IMG/VR virus record: IMGVR_UViG_3300028840_002431
Location: 124,001 to 188,000 of that record
Direction: 5' to 3' (one strand)
Length of the DNA: 64,000 nt
Below are positions 20,662 through 53,681 of the stretch, piece by piece (position 1 is the stretch's first letter; each line of letters opens with the position of its first letter). The translations under genes and the position numbers were made by a program. Under the pieces are notes generated by a model that searched no databases, was not told where the DNA came from, and saw only the letters and a program-made list of their open reading frames with translations.

Positions 20662-22408
20662 ATGGCCTACCAGTACACATACACGGTTTATGACAGTTTC
20701 CCGAACCGTAAGGTCGATGTCACTTTATTGACGTTCGAGATCGACGCTTCGTCGATTGTCCCGACGGTCGAGCAAGTCACGCTCATCAAGCACATCAACC
20801 GTCCTGACGCTTGTCGTATCCAGTTTAACAACCCTCTCCTTAGTCAGGAGGAGGCCGTGCTCGAAGGTGTTATAGCGTCGCACGAGGGGGAGGCGAAACG
20901 CGAACCCCAAGAGAGCACACCACCGACGCCAAAGACTTTGTGGGATCATCTGACTGACAACGGCTGACTTCGGTGTAAGATAGGGTGTGTACATACGCGA
21001 CGACTACGATCGTGAAGAACCCATGACCGTGGAGGAATATTATGACTCCATGTCTGTCGAGGAATATTACGCGAACGAGACGCTCCTCAACGATGTCCTT
21101 TTCAAACGTAACCTGTGGGAGCACCTGAGAGACAGGTCCTTTCTACGACATGAAGGTGTTCAGAGCAAAATTCACCACCGATGACGGGAAGTGGCATATA
21201 CCGGGGAACAAGAGACGAAGGACCTCCTGGAGATACTCGCTATGCGGCATACACCTCTACGACCCCACAGAGTGTCAGGAGACCGACGACGACAAATTAT
21301 CAAGTTCGGAAGTCTGCGTTCTCTGTAAGGAACGCCATGGCGGGGTCGAAGAGGACAGGAACCTCTGGGATTATCTGACCACCTAGGAAACGCCCGATGT
21401 GGAGACAGTTCTTACAAAAGAAGTGCCCAGCCGATAACTACCATTGGAAGTGGGACCGGCTGTGCTTCTGTCACGGAGGCAGGATATTGGATCTCAAGAC
21501 CGGCGTGGAATATCGTCGGCACGTGAACCGGACCGACGCCAAGGCAGCCATGTTCGGGCTGTTGTATGGGGCCAGCCCGAACGCGAATGGCGATAGCTTC
21601 TCCAACCTCGAACAACGGTTGCTGGCCCAACGGAGCCGGGTTCCGCCGATCCACCGGGACATCTTCCCACGGAGGGTTAGCTTTCTGGACAACGATACGC
21701 GGTTCATCGGGCCGGACGACGAGGCCGAAGAAGCCGTCCTCGAAGTGGTTGAAAAGCAAGAGGCCGAGAAACGAGCCAAGGAACCGGGTAAGGACCTCTG
21801 GGACCACTTGAAGGGAAGTAAAGAATGACGGTCTGTCCTGACATAGAAACAATCGACAGGCGTATAGTGGAGAAGATCCAGAGCCTGAAGGACGACTCGA
21901 AGCTTCACGGTTGGTCCTTACATAGGGCCTGTGTGGCCCACGGGCTAATCGAAGCGCTATGGGTTGTACGCGGTTACGAGGATGTGCCGGAAGAGGTCGG
22001 TGTGCCATCGCCCCTGGACTTCGAAGGAGACGCTTCAAGACGGCTACAGGTCTAATGTCCCCGCTGCCGCTGACATGCCGGATCTGCGGGAAAACTTGCC
22101 CCACTGAGTTGGAGAGCTTTTCGTACCCCATTATCAACGTGTGTTCAGAATCTTGTGCCGATGTGTTCGAGGAAAGTGAGGGCTGGCGGCCTGGATCAAA
22201 ACCCGCCCGTTTTAGAATGACCCTCTGGAGCTATCTGAGAAGCGAAGACTGTGGGCACGGGAACACCTACGTGGTCCGGGACTCGTCAGATTTTATGAAA
22301 CGGGCGGTCAAACACGAGGTTTGCCGGGACTGCGAACACCTGATTATTACAGTCGATGGGGAGGTCCGCCACGTGTTGTCGAAGCGCAACGAGCGTGACG
22401 TGGCTTAA
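20662..22408 (+). other. Cluster of LWDH-tagged small ORFs (20662-20967, 20987-21184, 21150-21386, 21397-21828, 22055-22408) plus untagged 21825-22055
   Basis: Tags TLWDHL, NLWEHL, NLWDYL, DLWDHL, TLWSYL. Confidence 0.7.
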
Positions 22409-22726
22409 TTATCTGTTAGCAAATTCGTTATAATCTTGCAGCATCTCTAGCGCTTGGGCGGAAAGCTTCTCGGCCTCCTGCACCTTTTCTATGATGTCTT
22501 TTCGCCGCTGTTTCATCTCACGGTTATGTTGTCGAGTTTCAGCGGTGTCGTCGAGTGCGGGAGGGTTGTCCAGGAACGTCACGAAAGCGTGCGGCTTCGA
22601 CATCGACCTGCCCAATTCGTAAAGATTCTCGGAAGCTGCAACCAGAAGGTTCGACCACTTGAGCGCATCCCGGCCCCATCCGGCTTGGCGTAAAGATCGC
22701 TCGAAAGCTTTTCTCGGATTGCCCAT
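22409..22726 (-). CDS. NPRKA-leader protein
   Basis: Starts MGNPRKAFERSLRQA. Confidence 0.7.
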   Translation of the reverse strand: MGNPRKAFERSLRQAGWGRDALKWSNLLVAASENLYELGRSMSKPHAFVTFLDNPPALDDTAETRQHNREMKQRRKDIIEKVQEAEKLSAQALEMLQDYNEFANR

Positions 22727-22783
22727 ATCCCAGAGAGTGTATAAATATAAACGACCAATTTTTCCTTATGACCACGCTGGGAT

Positions 22784-23059
22784 ATGGACGACGCTACCCG
22801 TTGGAAGACATCCGCGCTCCCGCCTGGAGCCAGCCCCAGCGCTTCGGCTGAAAAAGCCGCGAGAGCGCTGCAAGAAGGATTGAACCATCTCGACGAGACC
22901 ATCGAGAATTTCGAGGTGGTTCGTAGTAACCTGGGTTGGAGAGATCTCGACCCGCTCCTCAAGAAGGCCCACGGGATTGTCGAATTATTACACAAGGCGG
23001 GGCGGGAAGGCATTGAGCTATCAAACGAACTCAAAAGAGCCGTCCGCAAGTTACGGTGA
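22784..23059 (+). CDS. Hypothetical helical protein
   Basis: T-rich TAT motif upstream. Confidence 0.55.
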   Translation: MDDATRWKTSALPPGASPSASAEKAARALQEGLNHLDETIENFEVVRSNLGWRDLDPLLKKAHGIVELLHKAGREGIELSNELKRAVRKLR

Positions 23060-23064
23060 ACCAT

Positions 23065-23691
23065 ATGCCTTATAGTTATGACAACCGGAAGCGGAACGCG
23101 GCGGGAAAATCTTGGGGTGAGGCGATCGGCAAGTTCGAGAAGACCTTCCGCAACCTTCTGACAGACGATGTCCCACGCGCCCTCGCGCCCAAGGTCGAAA
23201 AGGCTCTCAAGGAGTTACAAAAGGACCTGGGGCCGAACTGGGAGTATGTCAGGAGCACCCCAAAGGAAATCGCCGGAAAGCTTCTGAGGAACGTCCTCGA
23301 TGCCGTGGTCAACAGTGACTCCGACTTCTCCTGGGCGTTGGACAACACCATTGCGAACTACCTGCCCCTGGAGCAGATGGACCTTGGGGACCTGACCGAG
23401 GAACTGGAACCGGTCATGGAGAAGGAACTCAAGGACTTTCTCCGCAAACACGTACGTGGCGCGACCGTGACCAAAGAAGACACCTGGGCCGGGAGAATCA
23501 CCTTCCGCGTCAAGTTCCCCGAAGACGCCAAACCCTCAAGGGATGTCGATGAGGACGTGGAACAAGCCCTACGCCCTGCAATAGCCGCGTGGTGTAAGAA
23601 GAAGGACATCCCTGCGGGCATGGCCAGGGCGAGCCTGACCTTCTCTGATCCGAATACCGCGAACGGCATGGTTATCGACATAGAACTGTAG
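23065..23691 (+). CDS. YSYD-leader protein
   Basis: Starts MPYSYDNRKRNAA. Confidence 0.7.
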   Translation: MPYSYDNRKRNAAGKSWGEAIGKFEKTFRNLLTDDVPRALAPKVEKALKELQKDLGPNWEYVRSTPKEIAGKLLRNVLDAVVNSDSDFSWALDNTIANYLPLEQMDLGDLTEELEPVMEKELKDFLRKHVRGATVTKEDTWAGRITFRVKFPEDAKPSRDVDEDVEQALRPAIAAWCKKKDIPAGMARASLTFSDPNTANGMVIDIEL

Positions 23692-23703
23692 AAAAGACGA
23701 CCT

Positions 23704-23913
23704 ATGAGCAACAAAGTCACATTGGTGGGCGACGCCGTCGAGGTAGTCGAGAGGCTGAAAGAGTCAACGGGCCAGAGCACAAGCGGTGTTATCAGGGACG
23801 CCCTTGGATTCTACGACTTCGCACGGGTCCAGGCAGAGGAGGGGAAGCAAATATGTACCCTCCGGGACGGGGAGCCAGTGGCAGAGGTCGTCACCCGTTT
23901 CAGGCGGAAATAG
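23704..23913 (+). CDS. Ribbon-helix-helix (CopG-like) protein
   Basis: Beta strand, then ERLKESTGQSTSGVIRDAL. Confidence 0.5.
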   Translation: MSNKVTLVGDAVEVVERLKESTGQSTSGVIRDALGFYDFARVQAEEGKQICTLRDGEPVAEVVTRFRRK

Positions 23914-24023
23914 GGCCGTTTTTTCTTATGGCGTCGCTGGGGTATGATTACAGGGCTGGCCAAGGCTTTTGACCGGTTCTGCAACGATCACACGCTCTCG
24001 ACGGGCGTTTGATGGAGAACAAC

Positions 24024-24332
24024 ATGTCTAATCCGAGAAAAGCCTTTGAGCAAAGCCTACGCACAGCGACCAACGTTGATATCACCGATGTGGACGCTGT
24101 GTTAGAAAGGTTGAGTCAACTCATAAACGTTGGTTACGAAAACGTCAACGAGGGTTGGCTGCTTGCCAAACAGTTCAAAGACGAACACAAGGGACTTCGC
24201 CGCGAACAAATGTGGCAAGAACGGTCTGAGATTCGAGAAGTGGCCGACGATATCGAGGATATTCAGGCGATACTCTTCAAAGCCGACCAGCTATTACATA
24301 AAGCCCACGTGAAAATCTCAAGAGCAGGGTAA
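24024..24332 (+). CDS. NPRKA-leader protein
   Basis: Starts MSNPRKAFEQSLRTA; GGAG RBS. Confidence 0.7.
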   Translation: MSNPRKAFEQSLRTATNVDITDVDAVLERLSQLINVGYENVNEGWLLAKQFKDEHKGLRREQMWQERSEIREVADDIEDIQAILFKADQLLHKAHVKISRAG

Positions 24333-24453
24333 ACGACTAGATGTATTAAAAAACCCGGCCTCGTTAGAAGCCGGGTCACGTCGTACTGCTAGGGTAGGCA
24401 AGCAGCATGGCAGAAAGCCCGCCCGGTTGCAAGTGGCGGTGTATAATATTGCC

Positions 24454-24708
24454 ATGAAGGTGTTCAGACAAGAAGGTATGCCCCGTGCTGCCAAATGGCA
24501 TATCAAGGGGAGGAAAAAACGGGACCAGCACTATACGTGGTCGCTCTGTGGCTTGGCTATGTTTAACAGCAACACTGAGAAGGTAGATTCAAGCAAACTA
24601 GAGGAGAAGGAAATCTGCGGCCTCTGTAGCCGACGTGCCGGTGGTGTGGCGAAAAAGCCAAAGGATACCGGCAAGAACAAGAACCTCTGGGACCACCTGA
24701 TGGGATGA
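24454..24708 (+). CDS. WHI...LCG...CxxC zinc-finger protein, LWDHL-tagged; paralog of 21150-21386
   Basis: MKVFR...KWHI...SLCG...CxLC...NLWD in both. Confidence 0.7.
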   Translation: MKVFRQEGMPRAAKWHIKGRKKRDQHYTWSLCGLAMFNSNTEKVDSSKLEEKEICGLCSRRAGGVAKKPKDTGKNKNLWDHLMG

Positions 24709-25193
24709 GAAAGCTCTTACAATTCCTGTGCTCCCTGACGACACACCGGCTGCCTTTGTACTACGAGGAACCGTGGGCCTATGCGATCGATAACCCTGAC
24801 GCCCCGGACGCCTTCCAAAGGGTTATCACGTGTACCCGGTGCGGATGGTACGACGAGTCCTTCGTGGGTCAGGTGGCCAGGGCCAAATACAAGGTCCGGT
24901 GGGAAGCCGACGAGGCACGTATGAAAAGGAGCTTGAGATGAGCGAAACTTCGTTACAAACATGGCCACCGGAACCGGGCGACATGGTATCGCTTGGCGTG
25001 GGGTTCGGCATAGTCGATACCGTGGACCCCAGAGGGGCCATGGTCCGAATCGCATCAACAACACGGCCGGACGAATGGCCGAATACCTATCAACTCGAAC
25101 GCTGGCCCAGAACCCGCTGGGACGACCGGAAGGTCTATAAGACCGGCGAGTATTTCATCTGACTGCCAAAACCCTTTTGTATTTTCGTAGGGT

Positions 25194-25682
25194 GTGGGCT
25201 ACTCATACGACCATCGCAAGAGGACAGCCGGACACTTCCACGAGACCGTCCGTGGCCAGGGGTACACAGAACAAGAGGCCCTACGGGACGCCCTGAGCGA
25301 AAACGTGACCGGGTTTGCCGACGAAGAGTACCGAGAGGTCCTCAAGTCGAAGCGATTGCGTGCCCCAAAGCCTCCACGCCGGGTCAAGATCGAGAAACAG
25401 AAGCTCCAAAGAGGTAAGGTCGAAAGGGCCTTCGTCCTGGAAACACGTTGGATGTCCCAGTTGGAGAGGAATCCGGGTCTCGCCGGGGACCGTCAATACC
25501 AGGAGCGCTACAAGACCCAAGGTGCGGCCCTGAAAGCCGCCAAGGAGGTCGCGCTCAAATACGACGTGGAGCTAAATATCTACTTGGCTGCCTTCTGCCA
25601 GGGCGACACACATCTGGCGACCGTGACACCCGAAGCCGGAAAACCGGGCGTGTGGGAGTTCGTGATAGATTTCCACGCCTAA
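25194..25682 (+). CDS. YSYD-leader protein
   Basis: Starts (G/M)GYSYDHRKRTA with a GTG start codon. Confidence 0.7.
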   Translation: MGYSYDHRKRTAGHFHETVRGQGYTEQEALRDALSENVTGFADEEYREVLKSKRLRAPKPPRRVKIEKQKLQRGKVERAFVLETRWMSQLERNPGLAGDRQYQERYKTQGAALKAAKEVALKYDVELNIYLAAFCQGDTHLATVTPEAGKPGVWEFVIDFHA

Positions 25683-25977
25683 TCTAAATAGGCTGGCCTC
25701 GTCACTGAGTGCTCGCCTAGAATTACCCCTAGCTAAAATTTCTAACTCACGCCCTCCCCTGAACGGTGTAAATAAAAAGGGTGAAGCAATACCGTTGCCG
25801 ACAAGTGGACGAGAAGGCGTGGAACTGGGTTGAAGCCAATGACGCCCAGGAGGCCGCCGAGACCTTCGTGGAAGAGTATGGCATCGAGGACGGGGCAGTC
25901 GTCCAGGTGTGTAGACATGGCACCTACCGGGTATCCGTCGTGGTCGAGCACATATGCACGGCCAGGAAGGTCTGAAT

Positions 25978-26334
25978 ATGGCCATGGAAGATGGCATAAA
26001 TCTGGACCTGACCGGCATGTCCGAAGACGACCTGTTGGTCCTCAAGGACGAGTTGGACGGTGAGATAACCGCCATCCGGATTCAGATTGAGGGAGCCAAG
26101 GTCAAAGCCGCAGACGGAGAATACTCAGACCGGACATGGTGGTTCAAGGCCAATGCCGCCTTGAAGATAAAGGGTCGCCAGAGCCAGCAAATCCAAAACA
26201 CACTGGGCCGCCTGAGACGTGAGAAAAACAGGGAGTTAGAAAAATGCTTCGTCGATGTGGCCAGGACACAACTTTCCCAGGCACAGTTCGAGGAGATAAT
26301 GGATGAGGCCAAGGCAACCCAGGAGGCCAAATGA
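25978..26334 (+). CDS. Coiled-coil hypothetical protein
   Basis: ORF in operon with ATGA overlap to the next gene. Confidence 0.6.
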   Translation: MAMEDGINLDLTGMSEDDLLVLKDELDGEITAIRIQIEGAKVKAADGEYSDRTWWFKANAALKIKGRQSQQIQNTLGRLRREKNRELEKCFVDVARTQLSQAQFEEIMDEAKATQEAK

Positions 26335-26567
26335 GAGTTAGTATTATTGTATCTGGCCAGAAGGTGGAACTTCCCGTCAGTAAGGACCAAAAGATAGGAC
26401 GCCTTTGCAAAGAGGCCCTCGCCAAGGTCGGGTTCCCAACAGATGAGGATTGGGAGATGCGAGACTCCGACGGAAAGCTCCTGGAGCATGATGTACGGAT
26501 CTACGCCTACCAAATAAAGGGTGGGCAAACACTGTACCTGAGTCCCAAGGCAGGAGTGGGAGCCTGA
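26331..26567 (+). CDS. Ubiquitin-like beta-grasp protein (DUF2604-like)
   Basis: IIVSGQ...EAL...EDWEMRDSDGKLL...TLYLSPKAGVGA resembles DUF2604 proteins (WELRD...LFLxLKAGVGG). Confidence 0.7.
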   Translation: MRVSIIVSGQKVELPVSKDQKIGRLCKEALAKVGFPTDEDWEMRDSDGKLLEHDVRIYAYQIKGGQTLYLSPKAGVGA

Positions 26568-27456
26568 TGACGGCCATCCATAAGGTCAGGTGCAACCCCA
26601 TAGCGGATTGGAGACTCCCAGCCGGGAAGAACCCCCTACTGGAAGGCGTCTTTGCGCCCGTCAAGACCTACTGCGGCATCATGAAAGAACCCGTGCCAGG
26701 ACACGGAGGGCCACCCAAACCAAAGGATAGCGGAATGTCGTCTCACGACAGGGATGTCACCTGTAAGAGGTGCAAACAGAGGATGAAAAGGATAAGGGCC
26801 GCTGAGCGTATCCTTCAACCCCAGGACGAGGCCGTGAAGGCATGGCAAGAGGTGGCCAAAAGGAACCCACAGCGGGTCAACCGGATACTCACCAAATGGT
26901 CGGAGTACGCCCATTGGGGCCTTGGCCGGGATATTCATATTGCACAGGCTGATGGGGAAATAATGCTGGCCGCCGTCAAGCTCCTGGGGAGCATGACGGA
27001 AAACCAACCACACGAAAGGCAATCATGAAAACCAGAGCACTGTCAGTCAACATTTCCAACGAACTACTGGCTAAACTCGACGCCTTAGTTAGTAGGTACC
27101 CATTTGCCAAAAGACACGCTGTCCACCTGATAGCTCTGCGTATTGGGCTTGATGAGTTGACGAGAAACCCAGAGCGGGTCAGAGAAGAAGAGCCGGAAGC
27201 AGCGGAGGCTGAAGCTACTGGCAGGGGGTGGCTTGATATGGCTTTGGAGGCTTGCGAGTATCTAGAGGATTTGCGGGCACTCGATCATTTCGTTTTTCAC
27301 CAGAGGTATAACGGGGCCTCTAACACGTGCCTTCTCTGCCAATACGGTGTTGACTGGGAGCACAAGGAGTCAGGGCACCATCCGGATTGTGTTTACCCAA
27401 AGGTTTGGGGTGAGGTAAAAGACCGCAAACTAGAGGACTGGGCCAGAAAGCAGTAG
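26567..27456 (+). other. Two hypothetical ORFs (26567-27028 Zn-binding; 27025-27456 with RHH-like N-terminus)
   Basis: Overlapping stops/starts; CG...CxxC; SVNISNELLAKLD. Confidence 0.55.
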
Positions 27457-27459
27457 GGA

Positions 27460-28250
27460 ACCGTGAGGCAGAAGAGCAAATGAAGCGCCTGAAACAAGAA
27501 TGTGCTCTGCTCTGGTGTTGATGGGGTTTTCGCCCAAAAATTGACCGGGGCTAAAATTTTGAGGGTACACCCCCTCTTCCCGGTGTAAATAAAAGGGTAC
27601 CCCATGGCAAGGCTAGGCTGACATACCCGGCCCATGGCTGTGCCCAGGATGGGTGGTGTAGGTGTAGCACTACCTTGTTCCAGGCATGGCCCGCCATGGG
27701 GTCTTTTAGTTGATAAAATCAACTTTTTCTTATAGATTTCCATACCTAACCGATCGCTGACCGTGCGCAAGATGGACGAGCCAATTCCGCGAATTAGCGA
27801 GTCGAAAAAAGATAAGCAAGCGGTTTTAACTTTTCCCCAGTTTATATAATCTATCCCCACCCCCTCCCCCTAGGGGGGTCGGCAACCGCCATGCCTTCAA
27901 GGGTTGCCCCTCCGAGTTACATGACATCGGACATTGGTGTCGTTGTTAGTTTGATCAACTTATCTCACCTATAAGATCAACTATCGCGCCATGCCTTCAA
28001 GGGCGTTGACCTCGTCCTCTGGCTCAGTGGTGTAGTTTATTTTATCAACAACTACACGAGTTGATTATTTGATGTTGCTATCTCACACCTGGGTAGAGTG
28101 GGCCGCCATGCTTGTGAGGGGTACCCCCTCCCCTCCCCCTCCCACCCGGTGTTTATTTTATCAACTGTGAAATGGGTGCAGCGTAAGGCTGTGGCCACAG
28201 GAAAATAATCAACTCTGCGACTACTGGTGTAGGGGTACCCCACAGGGAGG
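27460..28250. promoter_or_regulatory. Long non-coding control region with repeated motifs
   Basis: AT-rich patches, palindrome AGTTGATAAAATCAACT (27708-27724), CGCCATGCCTTCAAGGG x2, several ATCAACT half-sites. Confidence 0.55.
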
Positions 28251-28254
28251 CGTT

Positions 28255-29022
28255 ATGACCACAGCTAATGAGAAGATAGCCGAGAGGCTTGCGCAGTACA
28301 CACAACTGACTGAGAACATCACCAAGCTCGAAGGTGCTATAGAGCAGGTCAAGGCCATGCGTAGCGATGTGGCCAAGGCGCTACGTGAGGAGAATGGAAA
28401 AGATCAACTCTACGACCTGGGTGACGGCATACCCCTATTCGTCTCTGCCACCAAGATAGGGACCTTCTTCTTGGCCCCGAAGAGGCGGTCCGGTACCCGT
28501 AAGAAGAAGAAAAAGGTCAAGAAGGAGATCAAGGACGGTAAGGTTGTCGAGGTAGGGGAGGAGGGTCCGGCCCCTACCAAGAAGCCTATCGAGATCGAGG
28601 CCACCCTGACCGGCCGGGGTGCTGTAGCGGCCCCTGAACCGGAGGCGTCCCATACGGCCGATACCGTCGTACCCGCCCCCTCCGAACCGCCCCCTGAACC
28701 AGAGCCGGTCGTTACCCCGCCTCCTGAGCCTGAGGGAACCCCTATCGAGATCGATCGCTACGAAGAGGAGGAGCCTCTCCCCAACGTTGACGATTTGCCT
28801 CCGCCCGTGAACGCCGAAGAGTTGGCCGCGATGGAGCCTGACGTGGTCGAGCCGTCTCCCATGGACAAACTGATTGCCGAAGCTGGCGCTGATTTGCCCC
28901 CGGATGACCCGGAGCCTGTCGAAGACGTTGCGGAGCCGTCAGCGGCCTCTGAGGACGAGGAATTGGAGGAATTCGACCCTGTCATGGCCGCCCTGGCTGA
29001 GATCGAAGAAGAGGGTAAATAA
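28255..29022 (+). CDS. Acidic Pro/Glu-rich protein with Lys-rich segment
   Basis: 255-aa ORF; GGGAGG RBS. Confidence 0.75.
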   Translation: MTTANEKIAERLAQYTQLTENITKLEGAIEQVKAMRSDVAKALREENGKDQLYDLGDGIPLFVSATKIGTFFLAPKRRSGTRKKKKKVKKEIKDGKVVEVGEEGPAPTKKPIEIEATLTGRGAVAAPEPEASHTADTVVPAPSEPPPEPEPVVTPPPEPEGTPIEIDRYEEEEPLPNVDDLPPPVNAEELAAMEPDVVEPSPMDKLIAEAGADLPPDDPEPVEDVAEPSAASEDEELEEFDPVMAALAEIEEEGK

Positions 29023-29195
29023 TTTTGTGATCGTACAAATTTCTTTATGATCGGCTCCGCCCGTGCGTAGACCGGGTAACAAAGGAGAGTTGCTCAATCT
29101 AACTGTTATCGCGTGAACATAGGCCAGGGAGTTTTTAGAGTTTTCTCCCTCATTGACCGCAACCCAGGTGCGTGGAAGAAGCCGAAAGGAACCTG

Positions 29196-29220
29196 AAAAA
29201 GCCTCCGTAAGGGGGCTTTT
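29196..29220 (+). terminator. Intrinsic, possibly bidirectional terminator
   Basis: AAAAGCCTCC-GTAA-GGGGGCTTTT. Confidence 0.65.
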
Positions 29221-29258
29221 AAACTTTAGATCCGCCCGGCGTCAGGGGTAAGCCGGAT

Positions 29259-29591
29259 ATGGACGACGATAACAGCTACCTTCAAGAGAGCGACACCCTG
29301 AAAGACGAGTACGTGCCCTTCGACCTCGTGGACGAGAAAGGCCGAACCATCGGCGCTCGGGTCCATATCGACAGGGACGTGTACATACCGCACACGGACG
29401 AGACCCGGAAGTCTGCCACCTGGAGCGTCAAGCCCGGCACCTACTACGTAGCCTGGGTGTGGCCGACTCGGAACACGAAGCGTTTCCGCAACCGGAGCGA
29501 GAAGTGGTTCCCGACCTACGAAGAGGCCGACGAGTACATCAACAAGACCCTGGCCCGAAGCCGGAAGCGCTCCGAAGAGAAATATGCATAA
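29259..29591 (+). CDS. Hypothetical protein
   Basis: TTTAGA...GGGGTAAG promoter-like motif just upstream. Confidence 0.6.
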   Translation: MDDDNSYLQESDTLKDEYVPFDLVDEKGRTIGARVHIDRDVYIPHTDETRKSATWSVKPGTYYVAWVWPTRNTKRFRNRSEKWFPTYEEADEYINKTLARSRKRSEEKYA

Positions 29592-29623
29592 AATTCTTTA
29601 TGTCCGGCCCGGCGTAGACGTAG

Positions 29624-29755
29624 GAGGGGTAAGCTAACGGTCCTGGTGGTCCGGTCTTATCACAGCCCTGACTCGGAGTCGGCTCTAGCTGTGGGGCCAA
29701 AACGAAGAAGGAAGGCCGGTAGGGCGGGTTCGATTCCCGCCCGCCTTTGCTCCTC
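29624..29755 (+). ncRNA. tRNA-like RNA with expanded anticodon-position domain
   Basis: T-arm GGGCGGG-TTCGATT-CCCGCCC; D-loop-like TGGT; closing stem 29624-29633/29746-29755. Confidence 0.5.
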
Positions 29756-44964: not shown

Positions 44965-45114
44965 ATGGGCAATAAAGTAGAAGTTTACGACTTGGAGTGC
45001 GAGCTTGAGTACATGAAAGAGACCATGTACAAGGCGCTGGCACTGCCTCCCGAGATGCTCGAAGCCCCTCCTCCTAAAAACAAGACCCTCTGGGACCATC
45101 TCCGGGAGACCTAG
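44965..45114 (+). CDS. 49-aa LWDHL-tagged microprotein (not in ORF track)
   Basis: MGNKVEVY...KNKTLWDHLRET; CGGTGTAATAT upstream. Confidence 0.65.
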   Translation: MGNKVEVYDLECELEYMKETMYKALALPPEMLEAPPPKNKTLWDHLRET

Positions 45115-46568
45115 ATGGAATACTACTGGACAGCGGCGGCCGTCTTTATTGTCATGTTCTCATCGGCCTACGCGATCATCTCCAATATGGCCCGTGGCCA
45201 TAGGATGGAGATGGCTAAAAAAGAGGAGCGTTTGAGAGAACTCAACAGAGAGCTTCTCAAACAACAAGACGTTCTCTCGTCAGTCCGACACAAACTAGCG
45301 GCAACGGAACGAGACAACAAGTATTGGAGGTCGCGTTTCTTCGAGATCGTCAGACCGAACAACTCGAAAAAGGGCGACACGGAGCAACCTGAGGTGAGTC
45401 TCTGGGACCATCTAACGGGGTGAACATGGGCGATCTCAAAAAGGTGTTAGATTCGTGCCCGACCAACGTGGCGTTGGGTTACGCACGCTCACGGCCGAAC
45501 GAAACTGACGAACTCGCGCCGCCCGAAGAGGTGGTCGTCGTCCTAGCGTTCACGGAGAAGGGCTTTGGTTTCGGGGAGGTGTCTATCCACCAGACCCAAG
45601 AGGGCGTCTTTCTCGACACGGAGTGCATGTCCCTTGATCGGGTGAAGCGTTACTTCAACTCTCTCTTGGACAAAGCGATCCTGGACACCGACGAAGATCC
45701 TGAGCGCCACAAACTATACAATCGAGTAATGGGTCGTCATTGCGGCGACGGCTGCCCTGTATGTAACAATGGATAAGACTCAAACGGCACAGATAGACCT
45801 GGATTTCGAGAAAGCCGACGGGTGCTGCCGTTGCGGGCGTACACAGAACGATGACGATGGCTCTCAAGTCGAGTGGGAGTGTCAGATTTGCGATCGGCTC
45901 GTTTGCCGACATTGCACAATGACGATTCCCCACAGCGTTCCTAGGGAGTACTACGAGATGACCCTGTGCTCGCCTGAGTGTTGGGAGAAGGCCGGGCGTC
46001 CTGATGAGTGACGAGTTTTACTATTATTGTTGTGCCAGGGGGACCCGCTACCCCGGCACCAACGTTTACCACGCCCTGAACGAAGCCGGGGATGGTCCTG
46101 TTTGCGGTACCCCTATCGAGGAGTCCAACTTCGCCATAATGGATTTACCTCCCAAATATGGCCGGAAGTGCAAACGCTGTTTCAGAGACCTATGGGAGCA
46201 TTTGAAGTAACCATGGCATTCTGTACCAACTGCGGCGCACCATTCGGCTCCGACAACCAGCGGCTCGAAGACGGCTGTCGTAAGTGTTCCTGTATGCATT
46301 CCCATGTCGCCAAGTGGTTGGACCGATACAAACACGAGATGATCAACCCCTACAAGGCCGGGTTGTCAGCCGCCCCACTGTTGAGGCAGCTACGCTCCGA
46401 GGGTCAAGTCATCTACTGCCCTCGTTGCGCCAAGGAGATTGATACGATAGACCCCTTGGCCCAACCGACAACCGACAACGAGGGGCGGCGTCCTTACGCT
46501 GTCTACTGCGACTGTGGCTCACCTGTGATCGCCACCAAACCTCAAACCCTCTGGGACCATCTTAACGA

Positions 46569-46853
46569 ATGACCGACCCGAGAATACTATCCCCCGAGAC
46601 AATCGAGGCCGGTCGTATGTTAATGCTGCGCGGCAGCCGAAAGGCTTTCCTTTACTGGGCCGCACAGAACTTGCGGCATATAAGCTACAAAGACATCCGC
46701 CGTATACTCGATCGGGACCCCATTTGGGAAAAGGCAGCACTAGCGTCAGAGCGCGATGTAATCTTCACTACCCTGATCGACCACTACCACAAACTACTGA
46801 CCGAGAACCCGGTAGGCAAAAACAGAAACCTCTGGGACCACCTGAAAGACTGA
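46569..46853 (+). CDS. 'GR..F..W' helical family protein, LWDHL-tagged
   Basis: Similar to 51771-52058, 54109-54780 and 55673-55933. Confidence 0.65.
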   Translation: MTDPRILSPETIEAGRMLMLRGSRKAFLYWAAQNLRHISYKDIRRILDRDPIWEKAALASERDVIFTTLIDHYHKLLTENPVGKNRNLWDHLKD

Positions 46854-49800
46854 TATGCCCCGGTGTATCGCATGTGAAAAGGATTTCGAGAGCGACACCC
46901 GTGACGGGTGGGCATGGTGTTATGATTGTCTCCCCGAGAGCGCCATGACTGAACAGGAATGCTCGTGGCCACAGCCAGATCGACTTCATCGGGTTCGTTC
47001 GCTGCTTTCACGATAACGAGGTCGGAGAAACCATGATCGTTGTCCTCAAGGTAGCCACTGCCCTGTTGGCCCTGTTCGGCCTGATATGCCTGTTGGACGC
47101 TGCCCGTATAATCGTCCGACACTTTTGGAGACGGATGCGTAATGGCTGAGTTACATTCACACCTGGACCTGGAGTACCACGAGGAGCGGCTGAACCTCGA
47201 CAAAGAATACACCAAGGCACGTCACTGGAAAGAAGAGTACATCACGAAGTTAGAGAAGGAGCCTCTCCACGTTGACTTGGCCCGTCGTGTTAAAAAGAAG
47301 ATGGCCGAGATAAGGCGGCCACTGACCCTCTGGGATCATCTGAAAGATGAGTCCTTTCTGGCGGTGTAATATATCTGAAAGGCAAATCATGGCGAAGAAA
47401 GACGAGAATTCACGAGAGTTAAAACCGGGCGAGATCGACGAAGCGCTCAACTTTGTCCAGGGCTTGTTACAAGGCGGCTCCCCCGATGCGAATATGGACA
47501 ACCCCATGGTTGCCGGTGTTGTCCGCACAATCGCCCCCAAGCCCAACCCCGGCTTCACAAAAGGTGAGCCGATGAACCGAGCCGAGTTCCGGAGCCTCAA
47601 GCCGGGCGACTGGTTCTGGGTCTACTGGGCCAAGGACGATAACCCGGAAGATGTTCGGTTTAATAACCCGGAACAAGTCCTGGAGTTCGTGCCGGGTGTT
47701 GGTAGAAAAAAGGGCTACGTCCGTACAGAGGACGCCGACTGGGAAGAACCAATCGACGAAACCGGCAACGACGCCGACACGAGCCGGGGTTACGCCTACT
47801 ATTACCACGTGGAGAAATAGGAGTTAGAAATGGTCTACTACTTTCTGAGTGTGCTGGAGAGCCTAGACTCAGCCTTGGACATCGTGGTCGGTGTCGGCTT
47901 TCTGGGTATTATTGCCTACGTCGTCGGGGGTGTCATCAAAGCCAGCGAGGAGAGCGCTTTCCTCCAACGTATCGGCCGGATCGCCGCCATAACCGGGATG
48001 GTTGCTCTTGGGGTTGACGCCTTGGTCCCCACCCAGGAACGGCTTCTCCGAGCCTATCTCATGGTCCATGGGGCAGAAGCGCTCGAATCCAACAACTCGA
48101 AACGGGCTGTCGAAGACTTCACCGAACGGGTGGATGCGATCGTTACCGCCGTGCAAGCGTCCAACCGGGCACTCGAAGGAAAGACATACTGATGGCTCTG
48201 AAGGATGAGTACTACAACTTCGTCCTGGACGAAGAGCCTCCGGACCCACCCGTCGAGAAGCGGATTCTCTTTGCCATTGTTCAAGACTTCACTGACCGTC
48301 GGGGTCTCCGTCAGGAGTGGGAGCAAACCGACGAAGATATCCAAGACGAGATGTTGGAGACGTGGCTTCAACTCATAAAAGATAACCTGGGGAGTTAGAA
48401 TTATGCTTCCCTGTGACCACGGCCGGTGTGAGGTATGCGAGAAGGTCTACTGGATTCCAGCCGGGGTCGGGCCAAGGTTTTGCTCCTCTGGGTGTTGGGA
48501 GTACATGGCCATGGAGTCGTTCCTTAAGGAGTTCCACTACCTCTCGAACATGAAACTATCTCTCTGGGACCACCTCAGGATAAGTTAGAATGATCAACTT
48601 TCTCTGTAAGCTGGGTTTGCACCGATGGGTTCCGAGCACCTACCACGACTGGTGTTTTTTTGGGATCAATATCACTTGCGCCCGCTGCCACGAACCACAC
48701 CCGGCTTATATCACCAGACCTGAGGACGAATGCTCCGAGTAAATAAAATACTCAAAGACGCCATAGCGGCCGACACAGATAGTCTTAAAAAGGTTATCCG
48801 CGACTACAAGGATCAAGACGATCTTGACGACACAGAGATTGACATCCTTGTCCTCGTTTGCGCTCTGCACCAAGCCAGAGTTGATATGTTCAAGGCTCTG
48901 GATGGAAAATTTGCTCTCCACAAGCGGTTAGCCAAGATCGATGTTTCACGTGAAACGCCGGACGGGGCCGCTATCGAGACCGTGTACCTCCCGGCCAATT
49001 GTGCCCACATGCGGACAGACGGTGCTCACAGTTATTGCGGTATCCAGAAGGGTGAGCACTTCTGGCCCTCCGAGAAACCACACGATCGCCAGTGGTGCCC
49101 CTTCTGTGTGGAAGTGGCCGAGCACCGTGTGCCGCCCCAATTTCTCCGAGAGACTAAGATTGTTTGGGGCATTTAACTAACTTGAGGCAGACATGTCAGG
49201 GAACAAGAAAGACCACGTTGAATTTAACTACTACCCAAAAGACGCCAGCCCTGGTGACGGGACTTTGCGCCGTACTGTGCTCTTAAAAGATATCGCATCC
49301 GTTGACGAAAGAGACAAAAGGACGTGCGTCGTTACCATTGGGCGCAGAGACAGTACTAATATTTTGGTCAACGAGCCGTACGACTTTGTTATTAAAAGAC
49401 TTGGTTGGACCAAAAGGATACGGCGTAAGAGGGAGAAGAAGGGGAAGGAGAACGGGAACCAATGATTTATGTCGCTTTCATGGGATTGGCTGTCATTGCT
49501 ATTTTAACAACTGTGGCGGCCCACTACTACTCCAAGGCTTCCAAGTCCGAGGCCGCGCTGAGTGGTATCAAGGCTCAACTAGAACAGGCCGAGAACCAAA
49601 GAAAGATCTTCGCGGAGTCCAACCGCCGGATCATCGAACAACTCGAAAAGGTCCGTAACATGCTCAAGGAGGGTAAGACCATGAGCACCATCGAATCCGA
49701 GTTGGAGCGTATGGAGGAACCGGAAAAGACTCTGTACGATCATCTACAAGAGGAACGCCCTCAAGAGGAGCCTTCTTAGTTTTATCAACTATGCCTCTCA

Positions 49801-51226
49801 ACGTCTCTAATATAGAAGCTCAATGGGAAGAGATAAGCGCCAAGATAAAAAAGCTAGAGGAGACGCACGGGCAGATCAAAATAAACCATGAACGCATCAC
49901 TGCCCTAGTTGAAAAAATGGCTGCCGAAGAGGCGGCCAAGCCTAAAAAGACCCTTTGGGACCACCTGAGAGGCAGTTAGTTTTAATGGAGTTCCGGGCTA
50001 AAAAATCAACTGCTAAACCTGTCGTTCATATGGCGGGGCCGGTTCGTGAGACAGAGGGTAAGAGAGTCCAATTATGCCGGTGGTGTTATAAAGTGCTCGC
50101 TACCGAACATCGAGACCGATGGGGGCAGATAGTCAGCGTGGTGGGTGTATTTCAAGAAGGCGCTTTGATCCGTGAGCGCTCCGTAGCATCTTTCAAACTA
50201 AAGAATCCAAACGGCCCCCCAGACCCTTTCTGCTACCAGGACCCAGCGACAGATAGAAACCTCTGGGGACACCTGATGGAGTGACGGCCGTTTTATCTTG
50301 AGCGTCGGTGTAATACTTGATAAATTGACAAACGATGGTGAGCGTAGGTGACATAATTACACGTGGGGTTGAGCGCTTCGCGGTCATGGATGTCCGCCGC
50401 TCGCCACACCACATCCCTCCCGAGACTACCCACGCCACGATGTACGCGATGGGACAGGATATTGTGATCAACTGGACGGCCGCCAAAGGGATATTTAGCG
50501 CCGGGGACCGAGAGGCTAATCTTCTAGACATCGACGGAACTGTTGTCACCGTGTCCTTGAAGCCCATACCCAAGTTTCGCCTTCCGGGCAGCCAAGAAGC
50601 CAAGCTTGAGGGGTGCAACTGCCCTGTCGCGGACAATGCGTTTGAAGCACCAACGTCTGAAGCCCCGGCCTCCATATCCAGTTTCCGGTTCGTGTTCCGA
50701 AACGATTGCCCGGTGCATGGGACGGACCTCACCCCCGACGAACCCTTCTCCCTACGAACCCTCTGGGATCACGTAAAGGAAACATGACCAACGCTGAAAA
50801 GAAACTGACAAGCGCCCTACTCCGACTCGCCTCCGAATCTTACTCCAACCACGGGTGTAATGATTTCAACGTCTGTGAGGAGGCTGGACTCACCCCTGAG
50901 GAGGCCGACGATCTCTGGCATCAGCTAGGCGCGTGGGACGATCCGGAGCTTGGCAACAGGTCAGGCCCCATTCACACGGATTGGCTTCTCATGCGGTATC
51001 TGGCCGACTCTCTGGATATGGAAACAGCACCTTGACCACCTACCCTCACAAGTGTGCCATGTGTCAGGAACCGTTCTGGCACAAACCTATCAAGCGTGAG
51101 GGTAAGAAGCTCTGGTGTTCCTGGGATTGCTGGGACTGGGACACGAACGAGTGTGCCCCGACCATGGACCTCTGGCACTTCGTAATGGAAGGGGAGTAAT
51201 GTTGCCGCCCCGGTGTAATATATGGT

Positions 51227-51499
51227 ATGAAGTGGTTCTACAAAAACGTGCCGTATTTTGGCATCGTGGCTCTCAGCCAACAGGCCCAGCGTCAGGCCCG
51301 AAAACGTAGTATCAGCGACAAGGAGATTGCCGACGCTCTATATTTCGGCAAGCAACGGCGTATCGACTACGGTAGAGCCGTCGAGTTCGACGGCGTCCAA
51401 CTTAAGATCATCAGACCCAAGGGGAAAGCTATCGACCTCGTCTCTAACGTAAAGCGTGTCAATTTCTACTCCCTTTGGCACGCCGTGATGGAAGCATGA
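51227..51499 (+). CDS. DUF4258-like (RNase toxin fold) protein with variant tag
   Basis: LSQQAQRQARKRSISDKEIADALYFG; ends SLWHAV. Confidence 0.5.
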   Translation: MKWFYKNVPYFGIVALSQQAQRQARKRSISDKEIADALYFGKQRRIDYGRAVEFDGVQLKIIRPKGKAIDLVSNVKRVNFYSLWHAVMEA

Positions 51500-53681
51500 A
51501 GGAGTGTAAGGGGGTTATGATGCGCAAGTTGGAGCCGAAACACATCATTTTCCTAGCCGCCATTGCGGCTATCGTGCTCATAAACGCTATCAACGCTATA
51601 ACTAAGAAGCCCCGAGAGTCCGCCTGTGCTGTTTGCGTGAGAAACAACGCGCCTGTGGAGTGTGAAAAGATCTGTGCCATCGAGAACTCTGTTTCCGAGG
51701 GAGCGAGACTCAGGCTTCTAAGAGAACCCAAAAACCCAAAAGCTAAGTCCGACGGCTGGTTGGGGGAGTAGTGGCAAAGCTAAGCCCCAAAACCATCCAG
51801 GATGGCCGAGACCGTCTAGCCGCGTATGGGCCGACTGACCTCTTCTTCCGCTGGATGAAGGAGAACTTTCCAAAGCTCAACCACCGGGCCTTACGAACAA
51901 CGTTTGAAAAGATCCCACCTAACGACACCGAACGCCTCTTTACCCTTTACGACATGATAGCCCAACACTACGATACCAAGGGTCGGGCCAAGGCGTGGGC
52001 CACACTTATTGTTGCTATCCTCTGGGGGATCGCCAGCCTCTGGGTTCTAATGAAATGACCATCTCGTTTCCCGCCAAAGCAGACCGCCTGTGTAAGATAT
52101 GCGGTGGCCAATGGCACTCCAAGCGTTCGAAGGAGTGCCCGGCGTGCGTTACCGACTGCCCTACGTGTGGGAAACGCTACAGCCTACGCTACAAGAGGTG
52201 CCCCAAGTGTAACCGCAAAGAGAACCGCAAACACCCGTTCCTACGAGGGGTCAAAGACCTTTGGGACCACCTGAGGATCACCTGATGTCCGACACCGACG
52301 ACGAAAGAGCCATGAACTGGTTGAGGGCACACCATCCCGACGCCCTGGAAGTGGAGCACCGGCCCTTCTATCTTTCCCGGCTCGTCCCTTGCACCATCCG
52401 GTGTTGGCGCGTCGGCGGCCCAGTTACTCTCTCGAATGACGGCGTCTGCCCGGAGTGCGGAGCCACGTGGCACACGACGCTCTGGGAGCACCTGGAAGTG
52501 GAGCCTTGATATGCCCAACCTGAAGACAAAGATGCCTCTTTTTTATGAACTCCCGAAGGAGGCTACCGTCGAAATTGTCTCCACGACGGGGAGCATACCG
52601 CTCACACAAAAGTTCGCGTACCATTACGCCCGAAGTTCCCGCAACTTTGTGCCTGTCGTCAGCGCAAAACCCTCCAACAAGAACCTCTGGGACCACCTCC
52701 AAGAAACATGACACCCCAACAGAAACTCCAGTGTTGTATGTGTGACGAGGATCTGAGCGGACGTTTTAAAGTCCAGGACCGGGGCTACTACTTCTGTGCA
52801 ACATGTTACGACGCTCTCCCTCTCTGCAAGACTTGTAAGCGTGTGATTTTACCCGGAGAAGATGCTCTGGAAGGACTTTGCGACGAGTGTTATGTGACCA
52901 TCTTGCACAACGGCAAGGAGCCGCGTCCGAATCGTCCACGCCCCAACCGAGATCTGTGGGACCATTTGACGGAGGAGTCTTGATATGCCCCTGAACCTCT
53001 ATGACTGCGTCTCTGACGAAGCTAACGTGTCCGTGTGTAAGAAGTGTAAGAAAGCTCCGGAGATACTGATCCCATGGCGTACAAGCCCAAGGGAAAAGAA
53101 CCCGCTCATCTGCGTTAAATGCCTCGAAAAAGAGTTCGGGAGACTCCAGAAGATCGTCAAAGCTGTGGCGTCGATGCTCGACCTGCCGAAGACCGCCAAG
53201 CTGAGCGACTTTACGGACCACCTGTCCAGGTTGAAGAACGAGCGTGACGAGTACCGACGGTGGCACGACGAGTTAGCGAGTCAATTTGAAGAGGCTATCC
53301 AGACGTTACGTGAAGCCATGGTCCAAGCGCCCTCTAGGTTCATAGGCACGATGGTTGTAGCGGCGGAGAAGGCCGAACCCAAAAATAAACGGCGAAAGAA
53401 GAAAGCGAAACCAAAACAGGACATGAAAGTATATACCGCCGTGAAGGACGACGTGGACATTGCCCTTGGCATTTTCGATGACATATAACAAACAAGGGTA
53501 CCCCCTGTGCGACGCAGGGCACCAGAGAAAGGAAAAGAAGACGTTTCTGGCCATGGACCCCGGCGTGGGTTCTGACAGTACGGCCATTTGCTTCTTTACA
53601 CTCGATACCGAAAAGCCTATATTGAGGTTTACCCTTAGAACGGCCCGCAAAACCCTCTGGGATCACATAAGGGAGAGTTAG

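What the first reader, a model, noticed from the sequence alone, without database searches (positions are those of the whole stretch)
20662..53681. LWDHL tags appear appended to fragments of larger enzyme or structural families
21397-21828 contains RTDAKAAMFGLLYGAS, matching family-A DNA polymerase motif B (R..AK..NFG..YG) without the rest of the enzyme. 53478-53681 contains FLAMDPGVGSDSTAICFF, like the first strands of an RNase H-fold terminase/RuvC nuclease. 20662-20967 and 2383-2619 resemble short modules of phage tail proteins (weaker impression). Inference: the tag is recombined onto captured fragments, creating decoys or new genes.
Basis: partly seen in the sequence, partly recalled or inferred. 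Interest (0 to 1): 0.6.

Follow-up and report, generated by a model that had tools for sequence, protein, structure and literature searches.

The report
Shared LWDHL docking tail on phage proteins
A 416-kb phage puts the same short peptide (…K-T-L-W-D-H-L-K-E) at the end of about fifty otherwise unrelated small proteins. It most likely works as a common docking tail, and only a few of the tagged proteins are pieces of larger proteins.

Summary
The tags are real. The window (bases 124001-188000 of a 416.5-kb virus record) holds 43 [LIVMF]W[DE]H[LIVMF] motifs in 42 ORFs, 38 of them within 15 residues of the stop. Only codon positions 1-2 are fixed, and a 398-kb relative spells about 50 tags with other codons, so selection acts on the peptide.

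The "fragment" reading holds for a minority:
- 2383-2619(-) shares its first 44 residues with three fibre-like virion proteins of the same phage.
- 20662-20967 shares about 80 residues with a 195-aa protein encoded directly after a 2217-aa collagen-like tail fibre.
- 21397-21828 carries a 20-residue PolA motif-B look-alike. A tagged homologue keeps it, and PolA is the best hit in Pfam, PHROGs and PDB, but every score is below threshold. The rest of the protein is a different Cys/His module.
- 53478-53681 has no support for an RNase H or terminase fold.

Of 55 cargos, only two match larger untagged proteins; the rest are orphans, often zinc ribbons.

A related tail (xL[FY]DHL plus acidic residues) ends several conserved 140-260-aa proteins across eight relatives. 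I read the tag as an old short linear docking motif that expanded onto a hypervariable arsenal of small proteins. The receptor is unknown.

The parts
8998..56214 (+). Co-oriented array of small genes. About 40 of them end in [KR][TND]-L-W-D-H-[LVI]-[KRT]-[EDG] followed by 0-8 residues and the stop. The densest stretch is 37063-56214.
   Evidence: Motif list. Codon table. Gene map with C-termini. Public gene calls.
21397..21828 (+). P0001, 143 aa. Layout: N-terminal Cys/His 'CPxxNYHWKWDRLCFC...DLKTG' module (res 4-45), PolA motif-B-like RTDAKAAMFGLLYGAS (res 45-60), acidic/Lys linker, then DLWDHLKGSKE.
53460..53681 (+). P0002, 73 aa (67 aa from the ATG at 53478). Orphan beta-rich cargo ending KTLWDHIRES. 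The RNase H-like impression is not supported.
20662..20967 (+). P0003, 101 aa. Residues 2-76 are 37% identical to the N-terminus of a 195-aa protein (genome 414596-415183, -) encoded directly after a giant collagen-like tail fibre. A Pro/Thr linker and TLWDHLTDNG follow.
2383..2619 (-). P0004, 78 aa. Residues 1-44 are the N-terminal module shared with three fibre-like virion proteins (genome 108485-111223, -). A Lys/Arg/Pro linker and NLWDHVRKEE follow. A tagged orthologue exists in relative G001.
53682..53858 (+). 58-aa protein with two tags: one at the N-terminus (DLKDLWDHLSE) and one at the C-terminus (QQLWDHLRGDLGV).
21150..21386 (+). 78-aa paralogue of tagged 24433-24708, with a degenerate tail RNLWDYLTT.
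49462..49779 (+). 105-aa protein with a TM-like segment and the variant tail KTLYDHLQEERPQEEPS.
49985..50284 (+). 99-aa protein with the degenerate tail RNLWGHLME.
41393..41638 (+). 81-aa protein with the ancestral-type tail ADLFDHLRCDNA.
12416..12988 (+). 190-aa protein with a TM-like segment, a (PE)n linker and KDLWDHLRG.
44328..44837 (+). 169-aa protein with an internal tag (HDLWDHLMEE) 81 residues before the stop. This shows the motif is not bound to a free C-terminus.

Best explanation
LWDHL is a short linear docking motif. It is a 5-9-residue peptide, [KR][TND]-L-W-D-H-[LV]-[KRT]-[ED], at the end of a disordered Pro/Lys/Glu-rich linker. It probably forms one turn of amphipathic helix, with L, W and L on one face, and plugs into a hydrophobic groove of one shared receptor.

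The older form, xL[FY]DHL followed by an acidic tail, ends a handful of conserved 140-260-aa proteins throughout this clade of ~400-kb phages. In the lineage of this phage and its 398-kb relative, a W-version spread over about 50 rapidly evolving small proteins in a hypervariable region. Many of these are zinc ribbons and a few are membrane-anchored. Each variable 'head' is thereby tethered to the same receptor, in a hub-and-spoke arrangement.

New clients arise mostly by duplication and divergence of genes that are already tagged. Occasionally a module of another gene is joined to a tail; the two fibre N-modules are shown, and the PolA O-helix-like piece is a possible third case.

Shown: the motif, its peptide-level conservation, its position after variable linkers, its age, and the origin of the two fibre-derived cargos.

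Inferred: that it binds a common receptor, and the helical binding mode.

Unknown: the receptor. My rough split is a replisome or transcription hub of the T4 clamp type 0.25, prohead/scaffold targeting for packaging and injection 0.2, a protease as degron or adaptor tether 0.2, and something else 0.35.
For: - Number and position: 43 motifs in 42 ORFs of the window, 38 of them within 15 residues of the stop; 50 in the genome. The reversed-pattern control gave 0.
- Peptide-level selection: codon positions 1-2 are invariant and wobble positions vary. Asp and His codon use in the tag equals genome usage.
- Relative G001 (PolA 65% identical, GC 48%) has about 50 tags written mostly CTT TGG GAT CAT.
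- Logo from 87 copies, with P/K/E-rich upstream linkers.
- Cargos are unrelated: only 5 similar pairs in the first all-against-all cargo comparison.
- Only about 10 of 47 tagged proteins have an orthologue in G001. Where orthologues exist, the tag is kept.
- Core clients: G003 (complete, 411.6 kb) has only about 5 tails (GLWDHLQEEEF, TLWDCLTEEED, TLFDHLTDDF, NLFDHLRRGDDDDI, NLFDHLLDDED) on conserved proteins. Their G000 orthologues end LLWDYLQDPDE, DLFAHLDDDIV, TLFDYLKMDDF and NLYDHLMGDE.
- In up to eight relatives the tail xL[FY]xxL plus acidic residues is kept while the linker varies in length and sequence.
- The AF2 model of one client shows a confident beta domain followed by a low-confidence tail with a short helix on the motif.
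- Internal, N-terminal and double tags exist, as expected of a linear motif.
Against: - No receptor was identified.
- No sliding-clamp family was found in the phage.
- All client proteins lack any Pfam or PHROG annotation, so there is no functional context.
- The first Leu codon is biased to CTY: 74% in the tag against 40% genome-wide in G000. The peptide model does not explain this.
- There are no expression data; no RNA run holds the phage.
- Only two or three lineages carry the expanded W-form, so the comparative evidence for the expansion is narrow.
Confidence: 0.6

Rival explanations
1. One reading: the tag is a recombining cassette that is pasted onto captured pieces of larger enzymes or structural proteins. 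This would make decoys or new genes, and most tagged ORFs would be such fragments.
For: P0004 and P0003 are N-terminal modules of larger fibre-locus proteins followed by linker and tag. P0001 and its homologue P0014 keep a PolA motif-B-like 20-mer that retains the R, K, F and Y positions.
Against: - Only 2 of 55 cargos hit larger untagged proteins.
- There are no enzyme-family hits among 42 tagged proteins.
- P0002 has no support.
- P0001's other 120 residues are not PolA, and it shows no similarity to the phage's own PolA.
- There is no shared DNA around the tags and no DNA similarity between the fragments and their 'donor' genes.
- The tail is also present on conserved full-length proteins.
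Confidence: 0.12
2. Capsid-targeting peptide. The tail binds the prohead (scaffold or inner face of the major head protein), so that a diverse arsenal of small proteins is packaged and injected with the DNA. The models are the T4 internal proteins and encapsulin cargo peptides.
For: - The architecture (diverse cargo, flexible linker, short conserved terminal peptide) and the hypervariable gene array match the T4 internal-protein loci, which share only a capsid targeting sequence (PMC3012670).
- The phage has an HK97-type major head protein (phrog_2522, E 1.9e-49).
- A large capsid offers many binding sites for about 50 clients.
Against: - Four or five tagged proteins have TM-like segments. Internal and N-terminal tags occur.
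- The T4 signal is N-terminal and is cleaved off (stated from my own knowledge, not checked in the paper read).
- The tagged genes lie in an array that looks like an early or accessory region, not with the head genes.
- No virion proteome exists.
Confidence: 0.2
3. Degron or protease tether. The tail is recognised by an AAA+ protease (host or phage). Either the tagged early proteins are removed on schedule, or they act as adaptors that hand bound host targets to the protease, as SspB-type adaptors do with a C-terminal tether (from my own knowledge).
For: - The motif is exposed and hydrophobic/aromatic at the end of a disordered tail.
- Clients include both soluble and membrane-anchored proteins.
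- The many small, fast-evolving binder-like (zinc-ribbon) heads fit an adaptor role: 22% against 5% with two or more CxxC, p 7e-4.
Against: - No protease partner was identified.
- The motif does not resemble known ClpX, Lon or FtsH tags (from my own knowledge).
- The motif is conserved on stable-looking core proteins across the clade.
Confidence: 0.15
4. The conserved 15 nt (CTC TGG GAC CAC CTG) is a nucleic-acid signal, for example for translational coupling or re-initiation before the next gene, or a protein-binding DNA site. On this view the peptide is a by-product.
For: - The motif usually lies 20-45 nt before the next start codon.
- The first Leu codon is CTY-biased beyond genome usage.
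- UGGGA is invariant, since Trp has a single codon.
Against: - Variation is strictly codon-periodic, and Asp/His wobble use equals genome usage.
- G001 uses other codons.
- Core clients carry F or Y instead of W (TTY/TAY), which destroys UGGGA, yet keep the peptide pattern.
- Internal and N-terminal copies exist.
- The motif is always in frame and on the coding strand.
Confidence: 0.03

Closest known systems
T4 internal proteins with a capsid targeting sequence (CTS)
   Same: Both are a diverse, fast-evolving set of small anti-host proteins that share only one short peptide, which sends them all to the same place (PMC3012670).
   Different: The T4 CTS is N-terminal, is cleaved by the prohead protease, and is carried by a few proteins per phage (my own knowledge). 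Here the peptide is C-terminal, sometimes internal, and is carried by about 50 proteins, including membrane-anchored ones. Packaging is untested.
Sliding-clamp-binding motifs (T4 gp45-binding LDFLF of gp43 and DNA ligase; bacterial QL[SD]LF; PIP box)
   Same: Both are short hydrophobic/acidic peptides at a flexible C-terminus or loop. In T4 the peptide forms an amphipathic helix in a hydrophobic pocket and lets several unrelated proteins share one hub (PMC6212786). The handful of conserved clients resembles the T4 set in number.
   Different: The residue order differs: L-[WFY]-D-H-L against L-D-F-L-F. No clamp gene was found in the phage. The phage's PolA has no such tail. Fifty small clients would be unprecedented for a clamp.
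Encapsulin cargo-loading peptides
   Same: Both have unrelated cargo, a disordered linker and a short conserved C-terminal peptide. In encapsulins the peptide binds the inside of an HK97-fold shell (my own knowledge). This phage has an HK97-type head protein.
   Different: The consensus is different. Binding here is untested.
Family A DNA polymerase motif B (O-helix)
   Same: P0001 (RTDAKAAMFGLLYGAS) and P0014 (RSQTKAANFGLLYGVD) keep R, K, F and Y at i, i+4, i+8, i+12, plus the FG..YG core. PolA is the best hit in Pfam, PHROGs and PDB.
   Different: Only about 20 residues match, and the scores are below every threshold. Motifs A and C and the rest of the fingers and palm are absent. The flanking sequence belongs to an unrelated Cys/His module family.

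Membership tests
Family A DNA polymerase (PF00476), for 21397-21828 | Whole-domain match above the Pfam gathering score | tested here: not met
   10.7 bits against a cut-off of 34.3, E 0.25, residues 42-62 only. Its homologue P0014 gives no Pfam hit.
Family A DNA polymerase (PF00476), for 21397-21828 | Motif B / O-helix R..AK..NFG..YG | tested here: inconclusive
   The pattern is present and conserved in P0014. hhalign against the clade's PolA hits only motif B, probability 57%, E 1e-4 pairwise. Against PDB the best hits are Bst Pol I motif B at E 1.1.
Family A DNA polymerase (PF00476), for 21397-21828 | Palm motifs A and C with the catalytic Asp residues | tested here: not met
   The 143-aa protein has no further aligned region. 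Its residues 4-45 belong to a different Cys/His module.
Terminase large-subunit nuclease / RuvC (RNase H fold), for 53478-53681 | Profile match to PF17289, PF20441 or any related family | tested here: not met
   No Pfam or PHROG hit at E<=10. The genome-wide scans with PF17289 and PF20441 did not flag this ORF. No PDB hit at E<=10.
Terminase large-subunit nuclease / RuvC (RNase H fold), for 53478-53681 | A complete five-stranded fold with the acidic catalytic residues | tested here: inconclusive
   The cargo is only about 55 residues. The AF2 single-sequence model has pLDDT 60, with 3-4 strands and low confidence. The Atlas feature neighbour at 0.91 is flagged 'often chance'.
N-terminal module of this phage's fibre-like virion proteins, for 2383-2619(-) | Significant similarity to the N-termini of proteins annotated as virion or tail-fibre proteins | tested here: met
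   E 3e-7 to 1e-4 to the 190-, 227- and 488-aa proteins, and to their G001 and G003 orthologues. Eight invariant columns in the alignment. The partners hit phrog_2824 (8.6e-28), phrog_11518 and phrog_6320 (2e-10).
Tail-fibre-locus 195-aa protein family, for 20662-20967 | Significant similarity to a protein of a tail-fibre locus | tested here: met
   BLASTP E 6e-18, 37% identity over 75 residues. The 195-aa gene starts at the stop of a 2217-aa collagen-like tail fibre, phrog_6320 E 4.6e-223. The function of the 195-aa protein itself is unknown.
Short linear docking motif (SLiM) | A short conserved core in a poorly conserved, disordered context, kept in orthologues while the linkers vary | tested here: met
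   Logo and linker composition. Orthologue alignment with linkers of variable length. Low pLDDT in the tail.
Short linear docking motif (SLiM) | A defined binding partner | not testable with these tools
   No receptor is known. It needs pull-downs or a proteome-wide complex screen.
T4-type capsid targeting sequence | N-terminal position, removal by the prohead protease, presence of the clients in virions | not tested
   The position is C-terminal or internal, which differs from T4. Cleavage and packaging cannot be tested here.
Clamp-binding motif | A cognate sliding clamp, and the motif on the replicative polymerase | tested here: not met
   No PF00712, PF02768, PF02916, PF09116 or PF00705 hit in the genome, which is 87% complete. 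The PolA C-terminus lacks the motif. The host clamp was not testable.

The most novel reading that the evidence does not exclude
A hub-and-spoke system in a huge phage. A single receptor (a phage machine such as the prohead, a protease, or a replication/transcription hub) reads one peptide address. A hypervariable library of about 50 small binder proteins (zinc ribbons, fibre-anchor modules, an O-helix mimic) is plugged into it. The phage can then evolve new host-directed activities simply by putting new heads on the same tail. That would be a natural modular adaptor or targeting platform, at a scale (about 7% of all genes) not described for phages.
Probability: 0.3. Interest if true: 0.85.

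Novelty: new variant of a known kind. Interest (0 to 1): 0.62.

Why it matters
Shared address peptides are how T4 loads its internal proteins, how replisome parts find the clamp, and how encapsulins load cargo. Finding one peptide on about fifty unrelated small proteins of an uncultured 416-kb phage has three consequences.
- It gives a direct handle on the 'dark' early or accessory genes of huge phages. Identifying the one receptor would assign a common pathway to dozens of orphan genes at once.
- It gives a portable tag for studying that pathway.
- It gives a clean natural example of how new phage genes are built. Most arise by duplication of tagged genes; occasionally a module, here a fibre N-terminal anchor, is fused to the tail.

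The motif was not found in the searchable literature.

Tried and rejected
- Complex prediction of the major head protein (G000 12805-13683, -) with the 49-aa tagged protein 44965-45114 returned 'no answer', score 0.00. It is evidence neither for nor against binding.
- blastn of 20-28 kb against the phage collection: no match.
- Word-index protein searches: P0001 and P0002 found only themselves; one core client found one relative.
- Sliding-clamp Pfam families, and the terminase nuclease families PF17289 and PF20441, gave no hit in the genome.
- P0001 against the phage's own PolA by BLASTP: nothing at motif B. The phage's own motif reads RKGGKIANFSLLYGGG.
- A search for a different enriched C-terminal 4-mer in relative G003 found none.
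- Tag flanks, and fragment against donor genes at the DNA level: no similarity. A recently recombined cassette is therefore rejected.
- Foldseek of the core-client model gave only a weak Tudor/SH3-like match for the first ~55 residues, E 0.08.
- AF2 of P0002 without an alignment gave pLDDT 60. That is too poor for a fold search, so none was run.
- Promoter-like and terminator-like sites in 35-55 kb are not enriched over shuffles.
- No RNA run holds the phage.
- A ribosome-arrest peptide was rejected, because the spacing to the stop varies from 6 to 15 residues and up to 81.
- A T4-protease LxE cleavage site was rejected, because only about a quarter of tags have E at +6.


Full report
**What the window is.** The window is bases 124001-188000 of a 416,539-bp IMG/VR virus record, estimated 87% complete. 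GC content is about 55%. It contains no tRNA and has no DNA match in the phage collection. The genome encodes a family A DNA polymerase, an HK97-type major head protein (phrog_2522, E 1.9e-49) and collagen-like tail fibres, so it is a huge tailed phage. Near-identical copies occur in sediment and seawater metagenomes from three studies; no RNA run holds it. My own gene caller finds about 175 genes in the window, nearly all small and without Pfam or PHROG annotation.

**The tag is real.** The pattern [LIVMF]W[DE]H[LIVMF] occurs 43 times in 42 ORFs of the window and 50 times in the genome. It is always in frame on the coding strand, and 38 of the window copies lie within 15 residues of the stop. 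The reversed DNA pattern used as a control gives 0. From 87 copies in two phages the extended consensus is [KR]-[TND]-L-W-D-H-[LV]-[KRT]-[EDG], preceded by a Pro/Lys/Glu/Arg/Thr-rich stretch. Degenerate tails also exist, such as LWDYL, LYDHL, LWGHL, LWDCL, LFDHL and TLWxxL.

**It is a peptide, not a nucleic-acid element.**
- In the 15 nt, only codon positions 1 and 2 are invariant and the wobble positions vary.
- Asp and His codon use inside the tag equals genome-wide use.
- The 398-kb complete relative G001 (PolA 65% identical, GC 48%) carries about 50 tags written mostly CTT TGG GAT CAT.
- Conserved clients carry F or Y in place of W, which changes the DNA but keeps the peptide pattern.
- One unexplained detail remains: the first Leu codon is CTY in 74% of tags against 40% genome-wide.
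- DNA identity between tag sites falls to background within two codons on either side. No shared cassette surrounds the tag.

**21397-21828 (P0001).** The quoted peptide is present.
- Pfam gives DNA_pol_A at E 0.25 and 10.7 bits (cut-off 34.3), for residues 42-62 only.
- Two PHROG DNA-polymerase families give E 0.06-0.08.
- The Atlas language-model neighbours at 0.87 include short viral PF00476 clusters, which is a lead only.
- The phage's own PolA has a different motif B (RKGGKIANFSLLYGGG), and BLASTP finds no similarity there.
- The exhaustive phmmer search found 12 other representatives at E<=1e-3. Apart from three long repetitive or low-complexity hits (P0009, P0010, P0016), they share residues 4-45, a Cys/His module 'CPxxNYHWRWDRLCFC…DLKTG'. 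That module is not PolA.
- One of them, P0014 (183 aa, from a 23-kb contig with similar gene order), is a full-length homologue. It keeps RSQTKAANFGLLYGVD and also ends PRKNLWDHLKKE.
- A two-sequence profile of this region hits only motif B of the clade's PolA alignment (hhalign probability 57%, pairwise E 1e-4, 22 columns).
- In the whole PDB the same profile hits only Bst Pol I motif B, at E about 1.1.

The resemblance is therefore specific and conserved, but it spans only about 20 residues and never reaches significance. I rate true PolA ancestry at about even odds. The protein is not a PolA fragment in any larger sense.

**53478-53681 (P0002).** The peptide is present, but nothing supports an RNase H or terminase fold.
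- No Pfam or PHROG hit at E<=10.
- No PDB hit at E<=10.
- No homologue besides itself.
- No terminase-nuclease family hit anywhere in the genome.
- The Atlas neighbours with a family (TerL nuclease, 0.91) are flagged as often chance.
- AF2 without an alignment gives pLDDT 60.

**2383-2619(-) (P0004).** Residues 1-44 are paralogous to the N-termini of three adjacent larger proteins at genome 108485-111223(-), of 190, 227 and 488 aa (E 3e-7 to 1e-4; alignment).
- The 488-aa protein hits virion structural and tail-fibre PHROGs (8.6e-28).
- The 227-aa protein is collagen-like (phrog_6320, 2e-10).
- Homology stops where the Lys/Arg/Pro linker and the tag begin.
- G001 has tagged short orthologues. 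G003 has only the long untagged proteins.

**20662-20967 (P0003).** Residues 2-76 are 37% identical (E 6e-18) to the N-terminus of a 195-aa protein at genome 414596-415183(-). That gene starts at the stop codon of a 2217-aa collagen-like tail fibre (phrog_6320, E 4.6e-223). At the DNA level neither fragment resembles its donor, so both events are old.

**How general is 'fragment plus tag'?**
- Cargos are mostly unrelated to each other: 5 similar pairs in the first all-against-all comparison.
- None of 42 tagged proteins reaches a known family beyond weak zinc ribbons.
- A phmmer search of 55 cargos against all ORFs of G000, G001 (first 160 kb) and G003 finds larger untagged relatives only for P0004 and P0003. 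Other paralogues and orthologues are of similar size and usually tagged too.
- Tagged proteins are enriched in double CxxC: 22% against 5%, p 7e-4. Four or five have TM-like segments.

**Age and spread.** Only about 30 of the 175 window genes have a homologue in G001, and fewer in G003, so the region is hypervariable.
- Seven relatives with PolA 58-65% identical have only 1-6 DNA matches each, close to the control counts.
- The complete G003 has about five real tails on conserved 136-228-aa proteins.
- Their G000 orthologues, which lie outside the window, end LLWDYLQDPDE…, DLFAHLDDDIV, TLFDYLKMDDF and NLYDHLMGDE.
- In up to eight relatives these orthologues keep xL[FY]xxL plus an acidic end, after linkers that differ in length and sequence.
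- An AF2 model of one client shows a confident beta domain followed by a low-confidence tail with a one-turn helix on the motif. Its fold gives only a weak Tudor/SH3-like match.
- The clients have no family annotation.

**Interpretation.** The simplest account is an old short linear docking motif that tethers its carriers to one receptor. It has a small conserved client set across the clade and a lineage-specific expansion, in a W-form, onto a fast-evolving array of small proteins. Internal, N-terminal and double copies fit a linear motif and argue against a signal that needs a free C-terminus. New clients seem to arise mainly by duplication of tagged genes. The two fibre-module cases show that heads can also be borrowed from other genes. 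I could not identify the receptor:
- No clamp family is present in the phage.
- The PolA has no such tail.
- The single complex prediction I ran gave no verdict. It is listed only under Tried and rejected.

**Comparison with known systems.**
- The closest functional analogue is the T4 internal-protein set, described as highly diverse defence proteins sharing only a capsid targeting sequence (PMC3012670).
- A second is the T4 gp45-binding LDFLF motif, shared by the polymerase C-terminus and a ligase loop, which binds as an amphipathic helix (PMC6212786).
- Encapsulin cargo peptides and adaptor tethers such as SspB are analogues cited from my own knowledge.

This case differs from all of them in sequence, position and number of clients. 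Neither LWDHL nor LFDHL appears as a motif in the searchable literature.

**Verdict.** The interpretation 'tag pasted on captured enzyme fragments' is true for two fibre-derived proteins, possible for one 20-residue PolA-like piece, unsupported for the RNase H case, and not the general rule.

Noticed in passing
window 37840-39578: Four neighbouring small ORFs end in a second shared C-terminal string after or without the tag: …NSDGGP, …NSDAGRP, …SSDAGRP, …NSEAGRS. The string lies just before the next gene's start. It could be a second peptide motif or a conserved ribosome-binding/coupling sequence.
   Followed up: no
tag sites throughout the window (e.g. 24685, 42662, 46830): The first Leu codon of the tag is CTC/CTT far more often than genome usage: 74% against 40% in G000 and 60% against 38% in G001. 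Peptide selection alone does not explain this.
   Followed up: partly
window 21397-21531 (P0001 residues 4-45) and proteins P0008-P0019: This is a previously unannotated Cys/His-rich module, 'CPxxNYHWRWDRLCFC…DLKTGxEY'. It is shared by 61-183-aa proteins with unrelated C-terminal parts. Invariant residues are C, N, H, W, W, C, C.
   Followed up: partly
L123 4992-10001 versus L124 3348-10001 (tail-fibre gene next to the 195-aa paralogue of P0003): The giant collagen-like tail fibre is 1669 aa in one sample and 2217 aa in another. In the shorter variant, two opposite-strand ORFs lie upstream. The fibre locus therefore varies between strains.
   Followed up: no
window 15841-16356: A 171-aa protein with faint Sigma70 region 4 hits is conserved in G001 and G003, and in the contig that encodes P0014. 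It is followed by a conserved 442-aa protein (phrog_5960). It may be a phage sigma-like factor inside the accessory region.
   Followed up: no
window 28255-29022: This 255-aa protein has the highest coding score in the window. Its first ~75 residues are 63-64% identical in G001 and G003, and it has an acidic C-terminus. It has no family hit.
   Followed up: no
window 4406-5236: An Amidase_2 (peptidoglycan amidase) gene, probably the endolysin, sits among the small accessory genes.
   Followed up: no
L122 (genome ~240-245 kb, next to three tagged core genes): A family X polymerase-like gene (HHH_8, DNA_pol_B_palm/thumb), a patatin-like gene and an AcrVA2-like gene lie together.
   Followed up: no
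genome 304662-307661 (PolA, L008): The 993-aa PolA has long acidic N- and C-terminal extensions with repeated DFL-type acidic/hydrophobic strings (SDFLETVDF, ADFLDDLDG). These may be other docking peptides.
   Followed up: no
window 39850-40068, 40292-40588, 42685-42879: Three small ORFs end in PLTLWAALSGGD, PLTLWRALRVDFIN and PLTLWRCLENT. These tails keep T-L-W but have lost D-H, so they look like decaying or diverging tags.
   Followed up: no
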